A DNA stretch of 64,000 bases from Podarcis muralis. Its lineage: Eukaryota. Made by a program: the position numbers and the translations under genes. The stretch covers positions 29,574,001-29,638,000 of the forward strand of contig NC_135665.1 of assembly GCF_964188315.1 (NCBI RefSeq). Direction: 5' to 3'. Under the pieces are notes generated by a model. That model was not told where the DNA came from. It was given only the letters and a program-made list of their open reading frames with translations, and did not search any database. This document shows positions 521 through 13,536 of this stretch, piece after piece; positions within the stretch are counted from its first letter, which is position 1; each line of letters begins with the position of its first letter.

Positions 521-620
521 CTGCCTTTCCAGCTGTAGTACTTGGGCCTTCAGAAAACTAACACGTCTTTCCTCAAAGCATTCGTTCTTCCCTTCCTTTA
601 TGAGCTGCTCATATTGGCTT
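521..620 (-). CDS. Unknown coiled-coil gene, exon (R)SQYEQLIKEGKNECFEERRVSFLKAQVLQLERQ
   Basis: ttttatttcttag| acceptor, CAG|gtaaag donor, 100 nt phase 2-0; protein-like core of ORF 473-697. Confidence 0.82.
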
Positions 621-3600
621 CTAAGAAATAAAATGTATTTCCTTGTAAAGAATGTCGAACAAACACATAATGCTACATTGATATTTAATAAGTACAATTT
701 ATTGGAACAACTGGAAATGATGTTAAATGCAGAAAAGAGATTTCTTTTTGTCTCCTGCTTTTAGCCAATTATTCCAAAACCCTGTTATTTTTCTGAAAAT
801 TGCCTTCTATCTGTTTTATTGTACTACAAATAACTTATTGCCTTGAAAAGCCTTAAATGTTTCTTAAGTATCCGTTCATTTCTCACCACCTCCATGCGGG
901 AAGCAACTCTGAATACACAAATACTAACTACTTTTGTCCTCAAATACATGCTGGCTAAGAAATGAGCAGCTATATAAATCATAGATCAGGGAGATTCAAA
1001 CCGATTTCTAACATTATGGGCTCACACAAGAACTGAATAACTAATTTTCCTTCTATAAATTTCTCAGTATCCTCTGCCATAATTTTGTCATCCTTAGCTT
1101 TCAATACATGACCTCACAGATAAAACAAAAGCTGTTTTCATAAATCTAGGGCTTTGTTATCAATTTCTTTCAGTACCTTAAATCTTCTAATTCATACTTT
1201 AATCTTAGATTTTCCTCTTGCAGTTTCTAAGAAGAAATAAAAAATACTATGGTTAAATATACTATTAGGACTTGTAAATAGTATTTTTAAGTTACACAAA
1301 CAGTAGTTTATATTCATTTATATATAAACATTTGTCACGTATAAATAGAAACGTTTTATACCCAAAAAATTTATTTCAACTAGTATTGTAAACTAAGATT
1401 TCAAAGCTATATGAATGTAATCATGACTGCATCACAAATAACTATTATCACAAGCATGTGTTAACAGTTTATATAAAGACCATTATTTCATCCCAAAGGG
1501 AAAGATTTATATAAAAGAAGTTTAAACTTAATCATCAAAGTTCAACATCATGTATTCCAACTTCCCCTCATGCAACAAAAATTGCTGTCTCCTCCCTGCA
1601 CCCATACAAATCTGTTCCAGAGGAAGAATGCAGGAAGAAGGGAATTCCCATTGCAGTACAGAAATCCATTCTACTTGTACACTACAGATACCATTGGATT
1701 TCACCCAATAGGAGGAAATAAAAGATGAAGGGTGAGCCACAAACTGGAGAAATATGGCATATATGGTGAAATAAAAAATAACACCATAAAGCACCATCTA
1801 AAAAGATTTGTTGAAGACCTCAGTGTTACTTTAATGTCAATGATAATACCTTATAAAGCAGATACAAATCTGGGTTCTCAGAGAACAATTCATGTATTAA
1901 GTTCTTGCAGGGAGAAGACTTGGAAAAGAAGTATAATTAAGTTCTGCCCTAATCCTAATAATTTATAACATCTGCATTTGGATCTCCTTCCATGCACACC
2001 AAATATCTCTGCAATCCCATAATATTATGGGTGACATCTAATCCTCAAAGCAGACCTGCTGAAATAAATAGATTTAAGTAACCATTCATTTCAATGGGTC
2101 TGAGTACTCCTCAGTAGGATCTCACCCTATGTTTTAAGAACCCAGCTGAAACGCAACTCATCTGAAAATACTACTTTGCTAAAATATCAAGCCCTGTTGC
2201 TTTTTTATGCAAAAAACTGTATACAAATACAACCTTTTTTCTTTTTTACCTTTTGCTCACTCCTGTTCATAAAAGGAATGTGAAGTTCATTGTTCTGTTT
2301 ATCCCCTCTCAACGGTGAATTATCTTGACATGCTGAACCCTGAGACGTGAGGCTGCTTGCAGGGAGCTTGGCCATGGGCCTTCCAACCTTTAAAATAAAC
2401 ACAGTCACATTTCAATGGTTTTAAAAAAAACTGGACTTCACAAACACAGACATCAACAAAAGTAGGCAACATTAGACAAAACTGTGTAGGTAGCACTTTC
2501 AAGCAATTGTACAGTGGTACCTCACAAGACGAATGCCTCGCAAGACAAAAAACTCGCTAGACGAAAGGGTTTTTTGTTTTTTGAGCTGCTTCGCAAGACG
2601 ATTTTCCCTATGGGCTTGCAAGTTTGCAAACGTCTTGCAAGTTTGTTTCCTTTTTCTTAACACAGTTGCGACTTGACTTCGAGGAGCAACTCAGAGAACG
2701 CGGTGTGGTAGCCTTTTTTGAGGTTTTTAAAGACTTTGGTGATTTTTGAAGCTTTTCCAAAACTTTCCTGACACCGTGCTTCGCAAGACGACAAAACTCG
2801 CGGAACGAATTAATTTCGTCTTGCGAGGCACCACTGTACTCCTGAATTTAATAAGGGTTTTCTTTAAAATGACTTGTGTCTCTATTTTTTGCTACAGTTC
2901 TTGAAAAATATGTACAGTAAACCTTCATATGCACACATCATTTCAGTTTCAAAATGCAGGCTAGTTATTCTGTTTGTATGTAATAATCTTCTGCTTAGAT
3001 CAGTGAAAGAATCCTGATAAACATTTATCTGAAGCAATGACTGCTGCAGCGATGAAGGATTACCAGCTACAGTGAGCAGGGCTGGATTAACCATTGTGCT
3101 AAATAACTTTACTAATGAGCCCCACCAGCATAAATGTATTATGGTTTCTTCAACCCATCTTGCACTGAGTTCTTTTGTTAACATCATTCTACAATTTACT
3201 AAGCAGACAAGCCGTAGCCACATCCATGGTGATAGGAAAACTGAGAATAATGAGAATAATCTCGTCTAACAAGATCACAAAAAAGGAGTTAGAAAGCCTA
3301 TGGATGTGCATTCATCTATTACAGATTAACAAAGTATCGTTTAATTCTCCTTTTATGTCCCTAAAGTAGTGGTTTTGAAATTGGATTCCTCAAAAACATA
3401 GAAGGCTCCTCAATCAGAAGATGTATAATTGCTATTTATTTATTTTAAGGTATTCCTAGGATGCTTTTCTGGAGAATGCCTTTCCAAAATGGTTTAAAAT
3501 TGTAATAAACAACATGAAGGAAAAAGTGACACAGCAAAAGATAAAAAGAAAGCACCCAATTACCTCAGAAAATCAGAAAAGCCAATAAAACATAATTAGA

Positions 3601-12600: not shown

Positions 12601-13536
12601 ATTGGGTTTTCACTTTTATTCTAATGAAAATATTATATGAATACACACACCATTATATAGCCTACAACAGGTTCCCGAACAACTCAGATTTATTTGTCAT
12701 GTTCATTTGGCTCCTCTTAGCCTTGATGCTTAACAACGAACAACAGCCATAATTTGAGTGTGTGCTGGGTGCTACATGTCATGGGGGGGGGGCTACCTTT
12801 TTCATTAAAAAGAAAAGATTTTTTTTACTGAAATTTTCTCAAACAATACATAACAAACAAAACATACATAGCAAATCTTGACTGTGACCTTTGTTTGGGG
12901 GAAGGGGAAGCAAACCAAGGACAAAAACAGCTAAGATGCAAATATCACCATACGGAAGCTAAAGGGGGCCTCCCTTCCTACTGAGTTTAGAACTCCATCC
13001 ATACCTGACTTGCTTCAGAAATTCAAGAAAACCCACCAGAGAGAATGCTTCTCTTCACATGCTGCTGCCTCTGTTTGGCACCACAGAGATGAGGGGAGGC
13101 ACCCCCTGATCTCTGCCATTGGCCAGGAAACCTAGGGCCCAGGGAGGCTGCATTCACTGTCGGGGGAAAAGGTCGGGGTATAAATAGAGAGATGATAATT
13201 CCCTGCATCTGAGGAAGAACCTGACAGAAAGGAGGGAGTCCTATCTAACCCTGTCTGTTGCCAGTGAAGGTGGAGCTTGCTCCCCATTCCTTTTCCTTTT
13301 TATATCGTGCTTATTAGATTGTGAGCCCATGCGCAGGGGCTGGACTGCCTCTTGACACGTGTCCATCGTTCAGACGGACTGAAGGATGGCGGGTAAAGTC
13401 ACAGCTTTTGCGTCACTGAAAGCTACGCCGCCTCCTGCTCCACCGACTCCTGGCAAGAAGCAAAACACTCTCCCACGAACGCTACCTTGGCCGCGGCCCG
13501 AGGCAAAGGGACGGGGCGCTCGCCTCGCGAAGCCAT
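521..13536 (-). CDS. Uncharacterised coiled-coil protein gene, 5' part. Exons 13536-13486, 2387-2250, 1226-1177, 620-521; continues beyond the left edge
   Basis: Four GT-AG exons (51+138+50+100 = 339 nt) join in frame with matching phases 0/0/2/0, giving MASRGERPVPLPRAAAK-VGRPMAKLPASSLTSQGSACQDNSPLRGDKQNNELHIPFMNRSEQK-KLQEENLRLKYELEDLR-SQYEQLIKEGKNECFEERRVSFLKAQVLQLERQ (113 aa). ATG has strong Kozak context (gccATGG) in a CpG island. The link from exon 1 across an 11 kb intron is inferred. Confidence 0.7.
1177..1226 (-). CDS. Unknown coiled-coil gene, exon KLQEENLRLKYELEDL(R)
   Basis: ttatttcttcttag| acceptor, AG|gtactg donor, 50 nt ending in phase 2, which matches the next exon; heptad-like sequence. 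Confidence 0.8.
2250..2387 (-). CDS. Unknown coiled-coil gene, putative internal exon (46 aa)
   Basis: tttattttaaag|GTT acceptor, AAG|gtaaaa donor, 138 nt, open only in phase 0-0; falls within ORF 2205-2408. Confidence 0.6.
2512..2836. mobile_element. Tc1/mariner (Tigger/pogo-like) MITE
   Basis: TIRs CAGTGGTACCTCaCAAGACGAA / TTCGTCTTGCGAGGCACCACTG, with TA duplication on both sides. Confidence 0.88.
3606..3970 (-). mobile_element. Sauria SINE, full length
   Basis: (AAAGGT)n tail, tRNA-like head, 13-bp TSD taattagaaaata at 3593-3605 and 3971-3983. Confidence 0.92.
3990..4520 (-). mobile_element. Degraded L2 LINE 3' fragment
   Basis: Translates to LVSSRLDYCNALYVGLPLK...LQLVQ, typical of the L2 ORF2 C-terminal region; ends approximate. 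Confidence 0.8.
4553..5040 (+). mobile_element. L2 LINE 3' fragment interrupted by a BovB piece
   Basis: ARFKMLVLVYKGLYSFGPGHLKD motif, similar to the other L2 tails in the window. Confidence 0.7.
4748..4847 (-). mobile_element. RTE-BovB LINE extreme 3' end, 5'-truncated
   Basis: gttgttgtttagtcgtttagtcgtgtctgactc...ccccatggaccagagcacgccagg; 7-bp TSD aaatact. Confidence 0.8.
6742..6886 (+). mobile_element. SINE with tRNA-Asn(GTT)-like head and CR1-type tail
   Basis: Head gtggcgcagtgg...tgttaatcagaaggttggtaattcaagcccacccagggac resembles tRNA-Asn; tail gattcctgcattgcagggg...ccttccaactctac. Confidence 0.8.
9806..9950 (-). mobile_element. SINE with tRNA-Ile(AAT)-like head and CR1-type tail
   Basis: Minus strand gagcatggtgctaataacaccaaggttgcaagttcgatccc..., then ttctgcattgcagggggctggactagatga...ttccaactctacaattctatga. 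Confidence 0.8.
9951..10278 (+). mobile_element. Sauria SINE, slightly 5'-truncated
   Basis: Sauria body, (ACCTTT) tail, TSD ccaatcta at 9943-9950 and 10279-10286. Confidence 0.9.
10290..11170 (-). mobile_element. Old CR1 LINE 3' fragment, interrupted by a MITE
   Basis: CR1-type tail (ctagtccagcatcctgttctcacagtggccaaccagatgcc) plus an ORF2 remnant at 11005-11170; ends approximate. Confidence 0.65.
10788..11002. mobile_element. Tc1/mariner (Tigger-like) MITE
   Basis: TIRs CAGTGaTACCTCGG / CCGAGGTACCACTG, TA TSD. Confidence 0.85.
11845..11945 (+). mobile_element. Degraded CR1 ORF2 remnant
   Basis: Encodes IVKLEKVQKTATK, resembling the CR1 C-terminal motif. Confidence 0.6.
13486..13536 (-). 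CDS. Unknown coiled-coil gene, putative exon 1 (MASRGERPVPLPRAAAK)
   Basis: gagagccATGG start; AAG|gtagcg donor, phase 0; reading on past the donor hits TAG; lies inside the CpG island. Confidence 0.55.

What the first reader, a model, noticed from the sequence alone, without database searches (positions are those of the whole stretch)
521..13536. Unrecognised multi-exon coiled-coil gene head-to-head with RIOK2
Seen: four minus-strand exons with canonical splice sites join in one frame with matching phases. The ORF track shows only fragments of them. The product is a low-complexity N-terminus followed by a heptad stretch (KLQEENLRLKYELEDLRSQYEQL) and a motif-like FEERRVSFLKAQVLQLERQ. Knowledge: the RIOK2-LIX1 order is the same at human 5q15, where I know of no protein-coding gene head-to-head with RIOK2. 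Inference: this may be an uncharacterised gene retained in reptiles and lost or unannotated in mammals. I cannot name its family.
Basis: partly seen in the sequence, partly recalled or inferred. Interest (0 to 1): 0.78.

Follow-up and report, generated by a model that had tools for sequence, protein, structure and literature searches.

The report
Uncharacterised ancient gene beside RIOK2
The four exons are real, but they are the start of a wall-lizard gene that RefSeq already lists as "uncharacterized LOC114606728". It encodes an ancient helical coiled-coil protein of unknown function, found from sponges to marsupials, lying head-to-head with RIOK2 in sturgeon, frog, lizards and a snake, and absent from the annotated proteins of placental mammals and birds.

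Summary
Four minus-strand exons (13536-13486, 2387-2250, 1226-1177, 620-521) have canonical splice sites and join in frame. Assembled RNA contigs from three independent studies carry joints 2250>1226 and 1177>620.

Each exon peptide is 100% identical to residues 1-17, 18-63, 64-79 and 81-113 of XP_028605078.2, "uncharacterized protein LOC114606728 isoform X3" of Podarcis muralis. So the gene is not unrecognised. A fifth, cassette exon (5476-5351) belongs to isoforms X1/X2.

The roughly 600-aa product belongs to a pan-metazoan family: sponge, corals, echinoderms, molluscs, sharks, sturgeon, frogs, reptiles, marsupials. Every member is labelled "uncharacterized". There is no Pfam domain, no PDB relative by sequence or fold, and no paper found.

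No placental, monotreme or bird protein appeared, even with a marsupial query. The gene lies head-to-head with RIOK2 in sturgeon, Xenopus, three lacertids and a garter snake.

The core is under purifying selection (dN/dS 0.27). The N-terminus encoded in this window is weakly constrained (about 0.7). Predicted structure is all-helical, with long coiled coils and hairpins.

Function is unassigned. My best guess is a dimeric coiled-coil scaffold.

The parts
13486..13536 (-). Coding exon 1 (start codon plus 16 codons) of LOC114606728
   Evidence: Read. 100% identical to residues 1-17 of XP_028605078.2. Donor AAG|gtagcg.
13575..13625 (-). Promoter block conserved between lacertids and a snake, containing the X-box-like palindrome GTTGCCTAGGAAAC (13604-13617), about 70 bp upstream of the ATG
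   Evidence: The block aligns between P. muralis, P. raffonei, Zootoca and Thamnophis while the flanks do not. The strong half-site is GTTGCC in P. muralis and Thamnophis but GCTGCC in P. raffonei and Zootoca. RFX binding was not tested.
5351..5476 (-). Cassette exon (42 codons, phase 0-0) used by isoforms X1/X2
Evidence: tblastn. Sequence and translation (ag|GAAGAG...CTTAAG|gt).
2250..2387 (-). Coding exon 2 (46 codons): low-complexity, fast-evolving N-terminal region
   Evidence: 100% identical to residues 18-63 of XP_028605078.2. RNA contigs cover 2250-2390. The AF2 model is disordered here. N-terminal dN/dS is about 0.7.
1177..1226 (-). Coding exon 3 (start of the coiled coil, KLQEEN...)
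   Evidence: Joints 1226|2250 and 620|1177 appear in contigs of three studies. 100% identical to residues 64-79.
521..620 (-). Coding exon 4, carrying the family signature F[DE]ERRVxxLK[AS]QxxQLERQ
   Evidence: A phmmer search with this exon alone found the family. The motif is conserved from sponge to lizard. The gene continues left of the window: the contig runs on for 712 nt, and the next exon is about 1 kb downstream in P. raffonei.
14027..14092 (+). RIOK2 coding exon 1, the head-to-head partner
   Evidence: Later RIOK2 exons were recognised by their translations. Orthologous loci show Rio2_N/RIO1 genes in the same divergent position.

Best explanation
Window 521-13536 (minus strand) holds the first four constitutive coding exons, plus one cassette exon, of Podarcis muralis gene LOC114606728. 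This is a protein-coding gene that RefSeq already models but nobody has characterised.

It is transcribed divergently from the G+C-rich promoter region it shares with RIOK2, with 491 bp between the two ATGs. It continues for about 8 more coding exons left of the window, inferred from the 13-exon P. raffonei orthologue.

The product (604 aa in isoform X3) has four parts:
- a disordered, fast-evolving N-terminus (exons 1-2);
- a long coiled coil that starts in exon 3 and carries the family's signature motif in exon 4;
- a conserved helical-hairpin domain with a P-x-A-P-W loop;
- a disordered basic, serine-rich tail.

It belongs to a single-copy family found from sponges and corals to marsupials, which has no Pfam model and no characterised member. 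The family is absent from the annotated proteomes of placental mammals, monotremes and birds.

Shown: the exons, the splicing, the identity to the RefSeq model, the family distribution, the purifying selection, and the linkage with RIOK2.

Inferred, with low confidence (about 0.25): the protein works as a dimeric coiled-coil scaffold or adaptor that holds an unknown partner through its conserved helical domain, and it is co-regulated with RIOK2 through the shared promoter.
For: - Exon reading.
- Spliced RNA contigs from three studies.
- An exon-4-only search finds the family, with the match starting at residue 81 of a 599-aa snake protein, as the exon model predicts.
- 100% identity of each exon to XP_028605078.2.
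- Names and species.
- No Pfam family.
- No PDB sequence match.
- All-helical AF2 models.
- dN/dS between lizard and snake is 0.37 overall, 0.27 in the core.
- Head-to-head with RIOK2 in P. raffonei (532 bp), Zootoca (720 bp), Thamnophis (443 bp), Xenopus tropicalis (5 kb) and Acipenser ruthenus (479 bp).
Against: - The joint exon 1 > exon 2 was not seen directly in the read tables.
- One bulk RNA-seq run (12% of it sampled) had no read on the exons, so expression is not universal.
- The 161 codons inside the window show no purifying signal against close relatives (7 changes, dN/dS about 1-1.6). The constraint lies mainly in exons 3-4 and beyond the window.
- Nothing tested here supports a particular biochemical function. 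The fold searches gave only generic helical hairpins.
Confidence: 0.93

Rival explanations
1. The transcript is a non-coding divergent promoter transcript of RIOK2, and the joined ORF is a chance product.
For: Divergent lncRNAs are common at CpG-island promoters. The N-terminal exons in the window evolve almost neutrally.
Against: The exon-4 peptide finds 600-aa orthologues from snake to starfish and bivalve. The family is about 30-36% identical between lizard and invertebrates (molluscs, echinoderms, corals, sponge). Core dN/dS is 0.27. The reading frame is intact in 13 exons of the sister species.
Confidence: 0.01
2. It is an RFX-controlled ciliary or centrosomal gene.
For: The X-box-like palindrome at 13604-13617 has one mismatch from GTTGCCNNGGCAAC. 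It sits in a 45-bp block conserved between lacertids and a snake. Coiled-coil architecture is common among centrosomal proteins. Ecdysozoans, which have reduced cilia, lack the family.
Against: The strong half-site is GCTGCC in P. raffonei and Zootoca. No such site is in the Xenopus RIOK2-gene interval. In the window, a match with up to 2 mismatches is expected by chance 0.65 times. Placentals and birds have normal cilia yet lack the gene. No match to any protein in solved axoneme structures.
Confidence: 0.15
3. It is an ESCRT-I (TSG101) adaptor that works through the conserved PSAP motif in the exposed loop at residues 294-298.
For: PSAPW is invariant in the vertebrates examined and lies in a low-confidence loop between helices.
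Against: The motif is PAAPW in corals, sea urchins and others, PNAPL in Lingula and PTAPW in some species. The conserved core is therefore P-x-A-P-W/L, not P(S/T)AP. The motif lies outside the window.
Confidence: 0.04
4. Placental mammals and birds do have the gene, but it is too diverged, unannotated or pseudogenised to be seen in protein databases. On this reading the 'loss' is an annotation artefact.
For: Only protein collections could be searched. No vertebrate genome search tool was available, and human sequence was off limits.
Against: Marsupial proteins are 50-62% identical to turtle, alligator and frog proteins. A placental orthologue would be expected at similar scores across many annotated genomes, yet none is among the 240 rows listed for the 282 hits.
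Confidence: 0.08

Closest known systems
RefSeq gene LOC114606728 of Podarcis muralis (XP_028605078.2, isoform X3) and its 'uncharacterized protein LOC...' orthologues, e.g. Anolis LOC103277627, Xenopus tropicalis LOC100497254, Monodelphis LOC103103181, Acanthaster LOC110982924
   Same: The window exons are identical to the first 113 residues of isoform X3. The orthologues share the exon order, the signature motif and, in sturgeon, frog, lizards and a snake, the position beside RIOK2.
   Different: Nothing differs. The finding is this gene. The model carries no name, no domain and no function.
Conserved bidirectional (head-to-head) gene pairs that share a CpG-rich promoter
   Same: There are 491 bp between the two start codons. 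G+C rises to 0.55 over the interval. The arrangement is kept in sturgeon, frog, lizards and a snake.
   Different: Co-expression with RIOK2 was not measured. In catfish, two marsupials, a shark and a starfish no RIOK2 gene lies within 10 kb upstream of the first coding exon.
Generic long coiled-coil scaffold proteins (CCDC-type)
   Same: All-helical prediction with an 88-residue helix, helical hairpins and disordered ends.
   Different: No sequence, profile or fold match to any named family. The best Pfam hits are all below their cut-offs. The best structural Z is about 8-9.6, tied among unrelated hairpins.

Membership tests
Unnamed metazoan family of LOC114606728 orthologues | Sequence identity of the exon peptides to the annotated protein of the same species | tested here: met
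   Each of the four exons is 100% identical to XP_028605078.2, at residues 1-17, 18-63, 64-79 and 81-113.
Unnamed metazoan family of LOC114606728 orthologues | Signature motif F[DE]ERRVxxLK[AS]QxxQLERQ at the start of the long coiled coil | tested here: met
   Present in exon 4 and aligned across 43 members from sponge to lizard.
Unnamed metazoan family of LOC114606728 orthologues | Conserved helical domain with the P-x-A-P-W loop (residues about 200-510) | not testable with these tools
   This part is encoded left of the window. It is present in the full RefSeq protein P0148.
Unnamed metazoan family of LOC114606728 orthologues | Divergent position next to RIOK2 (sturgeon, frog and squamate members) | tested here: met
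   Window: ATGs at 13536 (-) and 14027 (+). The same arrangement is seen.
RFX-regulated ciliary genes | A conserved X-box (GTNRCC N0-3 RGYAAC) in the proximal promoter | tested here: inconclusive
   The site is present with 1 mismatch in P. muralis and Thamnophis, weakened in P. raffonei and Zootoca, and absent from the Xenopus interval.
P(S/T)AP late-domain proteins that bind TSG101 | A P(S/T)AP motif kept across the family | tested here: not met
   PAAPW in corals and sea urchins, PNAPL in Lingula.
Any Pfam family (best weak hits: CCDC93_CC, ATG17_like, DUF5344, FANCA_interact) | Score at or above the Pfam gathering threshold | tested here: not met
   No hit reaches its cut-off in 62 members.
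Non-coding divergent promoter transcripts | No constraint on the reading frame | tested here: not met
   Core dN/dS is 0.27. Protein similarity extends to cnidarians and a sponge.

The most novel reading that the evidence does not exclude
The family is a truly undescribed, sponge-to-marsupial conserved cell-biological component. It has escaped study because it is missing from human, mouse and chicken, did not appear for fly, worm or cypriniform (zebrafish-group) fishes in these searches, and survives among common laboratory animals only in Xenopus. Its promoter-sharing with RIOK2 in sturgeon, frog, lizards and a snake reflects a functional or regulatory tie that placentals and birds could dispense with.
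Probability: 0.5. Interest if true: 0.55.

Novelty: already known. Interest (0 to 1): 0.35.

Why it matters
For the scan, the "unrecognised gene" is a RefSeq model, so nothing new is added to the lizard's gene list.

For biology, the interest lies in the family. It is a well-conserved animal protein with a sharp signature motif, no domain assignment, no structure, no paper, and no member in placental mammals or birds. It sits head-to-head with the ribosome-maturation kinase gene RIOK2 in sturgeon, frog, lizards and a snake.

Xenopus has one copy beside riok2, so the function could be tested directly there.

Tried and rejected
1. Only exon 4, given by reference, went to the protein search. The other exons were compared one by one with proteins returned by the tools. 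dN/dS was counted codon by codon from per-exon matches without building a joined sequence.
2. Rfam on 1-16000: no family.
3. Pfam on single members and on all 62 members: nothing above a cut-off. The precomputed 'PF23267 ENOX1' tag on marsupial isoforms is only a weak hit and was not reproduced.
4. PDB by profile: only coiled-coil noise, E at least 0.025.
5. Fold searches with the full-length model and the domain model: Foldseek against the PDB, VIA-align wide and the ESM-Atlas shape search gave no specific match.
7. The PSAP/TSG101 idea was rejected on alignment.
8. The X-box idea is left open but weak.
9. Six paper searches (LOC ids, UniProt ids, motif strings, RIOK2 synteny terms) returned nothing.
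10. The look-up of encoding contigs had no record for the two P. muralis isoforms tried, so the full gene was read in P. raffonei instead.
11. No human or other placental DNA was looked at. No N runs were met.
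Full report
**What is in the sequence**

On the minus strand I read four exons:
- Exon 1 runs from the ATG at 13536 to AAG|gt at 13486 (17 codons).
- Exon 2 runs from ag|GTT at 2387 to AAG|gt at 2250 (46 codons).
- Exon 3 runs from ag|AAA at 1226 to AG|gt at 1177 (16 codons plus 2 nt).
- Exon 4 runs from ag|A at 620 to CAG|gt at 521 (1 nt plus 33 codons).

On the plus strand, RIOK2 coding exon 1 starts at 14027 and ends at 14092. Further RIOK2 exons, and two exons whose translations I recognised from memory as LIX1 (not tested by any tool), follow downstream. 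The two start codons are 491 bp apart, in the most G+C-rich part of the region (0.55).

**Transcription and splicing**

One reads call was allowed, and I laid four runs on window 1-3400.
- Contigs of 1005, 581 and 580 nt, from runs of three different studies, cover only 519-620, 1177-1226 and 2250-2390.
- They join 620|1177 and 1226|2250. The skipped ends are CT..AC, which is GT..AG on the minus strand.
- The longest contig has 712 more letters beyond 519, so the transcript continues into exons left of the window.
- Another contig has 26 letters beyond 2390, but the tables did not show them. The joint 13486>2387 is therefore not directly confirmed by reads.
- A bulk RNA-seq run, of which 12% was read, had no read on the exons. 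Expression is therefore not ubiquitous or not high.
- In all, twelve runs from eight samples in these three studies held about a tenth of the words of 400-2600, which is about the size of the three exons.

**Identity**

- Exon 4 alone (window:521-619:-) went to the exhaustive protein search. It hit 17 proteins. One was a 599-aa protein in which the match starts at residue 81, exactly where the exon model puts it.
- That protein is 'uncharacterized protein LOC106540955' of Thamnophis sirtalis. Other hits are likewise 'uncharacterized' proteins of opossum, lungfish, a starfish and a bivalve.
- Comparing each exon separately with the proteins returned, all four are 100% identical to residues 1-17, 18-63, 64-79 and 81-113 of XP_028605078.2. 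This is 'uncharacterized protein LOC114606728 isoform X3' of Podarcis muralis, 604 aa.
- The window is therefore wall-lizard DNA, and the gene is already modelled by RefSeq with five isoforms.
- Isoforms X1/X2 use one more exon, which I located at 5476-5351 (42 codons, ag|...|gt).
- In the sister species P. raffonei the gene has 13 coding exons over 46.7 kb, and the exon after 'exon 4' lies about 1 kb further on. This explains why the window ends before it.

**The family**

A profile of six distant members found 135 proteins. A profile of four invertebrate members found 46. A marsupial query found 147.

Members are present in these groups:
- a sponge (Halichondria), anthozoan corals and anemones;
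- all five echinoderm classes;
- bivalves, gastropods, Lingula, a nemertean and an annelid;
- sharks, bichir, sturgeon, gar and bowfin;
- eels, herrings, catfishes and characins;
- coelacanth, lungfish, caecilians and many frogs including Xenopus;
- turtles, alligator and squamates;
- five marsupials.

Virtually all carry the label 'uncharacterized' or 'hypothetical'. The few other names (CENP-F-like, alpha-internexin, CCDC18-like, hydroxyacylglutathione hydrolase) look like automatic mislabels.

No placental, monotreme or bird protein was listed. With the marsupial query, the next best hits after marsupials are turtles, alligator and frogs at 54-62% identity. An annotated placental orthologue would have ranked there. 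No ecdysozoan, cypriniform or euteleost protein appeared either. At E up to 0.001 only family members were found, so no remote paralogue is visible.

**Constraint**

Lizard proteins are about 30-36% identical to those of invertebrates, including corals and a sponge.

Codon counts made exon by exon between lacertids and the garter snake give these dN/dS values:
- 0.37 overall;
- 0.27 for the core;
- about 0.7 for the N-terminus (exon 1, cassette exon, exon 2);
- 0.73-0.80 for the tail.

Within the window alone, against close relatives, there are too few changes to say anything.

**Linkage with RIOK2**

The gene lies head-to-head with a Rio2_N/RIO1 gene in these species:
- P. raffonei (532 bp between coding starts);
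- Zootoca (720 bp);
- Thamnophis (443 bp);
- Xenopus tropicalis (about 5 kb);
- the sterlet Acipenser ruthenus (479 bp).

The pairing is thus shared by a ray-finned fish and tetrapods.

No RIOK2 lies within 10 kb upstream of the first coding exon in channel catfish, two marsupials, a shark or a starfish. The marsupial proteins start near exon 3, so their promoters may lie further away. This is open.

**Protein architecture and the search for function**

AlphaFold2 with a 62-sequence alignment gives the following (mean pLDDT 62):
- a disordered N-terminus (1-57) and tail (510-599);
- a coiled coil at 59-148;
- helical hairpins at 216-292 and 325-509, including an 88-residue helix.

The domain 200-512, modelled alone with 76 sequences, is the same (pLDDT 73).

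No search gave more than generic helical hairpins:
- Foldseek against the PDB found no match with E up to 0.001.
- The exhaustive VIA-align search gave a best Z of 8.5-9.6, tied among designed helical bundles, SMC arms, ESCRT-III hairpins and many others.
- The ESM-Atlas shape search gave TM up to 0.37.
- Pfam and the PDB by sequence profile gave nothing above threshold.

**Two leads tested**

(a) The PSAPW loop looked like a TSG101-binding late domain. The family-wide motif, however, is P-x-A-P-W/L, with PAAPW in corals and sea urchins. I reject this lead.

- It is one mismatch from the ideal palindrome, and it sits in a 45-bp block conserved between lacertids and a snake.
- The strong half-site is changed to GCTGCC in P. 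raffonei and Zootoca.
- The Xenopus interval has no such site.
- A match at this stringency is expected 0.65 times per window by chance.
- The conserved block is real. Its reading as an X-box is unproven.

**Verdict**

'Unrecognised' is wrong, because RefSeq already annotates the gene. 'Uncharacterised, kept in reptiles, missing in human-type mammals' is right, with two corrections: marsupials keep it, and the family is pan-metazoan and also missing from birds.

The function remains unknown. I commit, at about 25%, to a dimeric coiled-coil scaffold or adaptor co-regulated with RIOK2. A ciliary or centrosomal role gets about 15%.

Six literature searches found no paper that mentions any member. 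Supplements and subscription journals were not covered.

Noticed in passing
window 2509-2840 (intron between exon 2 and the cassette exon): A 330-bp MITE-like element. It has terminal inverted repeats (CAGTGGTACCTC...GAGGCACCACTG) and a TA duplication. Summed RNA contig depth on it is enormous (10^4-10^5), which means many copies are transcribed genome-wide. One contig joins 2507 to 2835 without it, so this is either an allele or another locus lacking the insertion.
   Followed up: partly
window 3573-3969, 9875-10282, 31337-31726, 56543-56770: Copies, in both orientations, of one interspersed repeat. Their ORF translations are nearly the same (e.g. ...[14 protein letters not shown]..., ...[24 protein letters not shown]...). 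It is probably a lizard SINE.
   Followed up: no
window about 13800-13830, versus L001 about 9680-9740: The shared RIOK2/LOC114606728 promoter interval holds a (TC)n microsatellite. It is about 40 bp longer in P. raffonei than in P. muralis. A poly-C tract near the RIOK2 start also differs in length.
   Followed up: no
window 33901-34146 and 61775-62002 (+): Two exons downstream of RIOK2 on the same strand whose translations ([12 protein letters not shown]..., ...[28 protein letters not shown]) I recognised from memory as LIX1.
   Followed up: partly
window 13575-13625: Beside the X-box-like palindrome, the conserved block contains GGAAACGCGTCGCGCG, which is identical from lacertids to garter snake. 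No factor was assigned.
   Followed up: partly
Marsupial orthologues (P0007, P0168, P0031): The marsupial proteins begin near the equivalent of exon 3 and lack the lizard N-terminal exons. Their genes span 135-211 kb, against 47 kb in lacertids. No RIOK2 lies within 10 kb of their first coding exon.
   Followed up: partly
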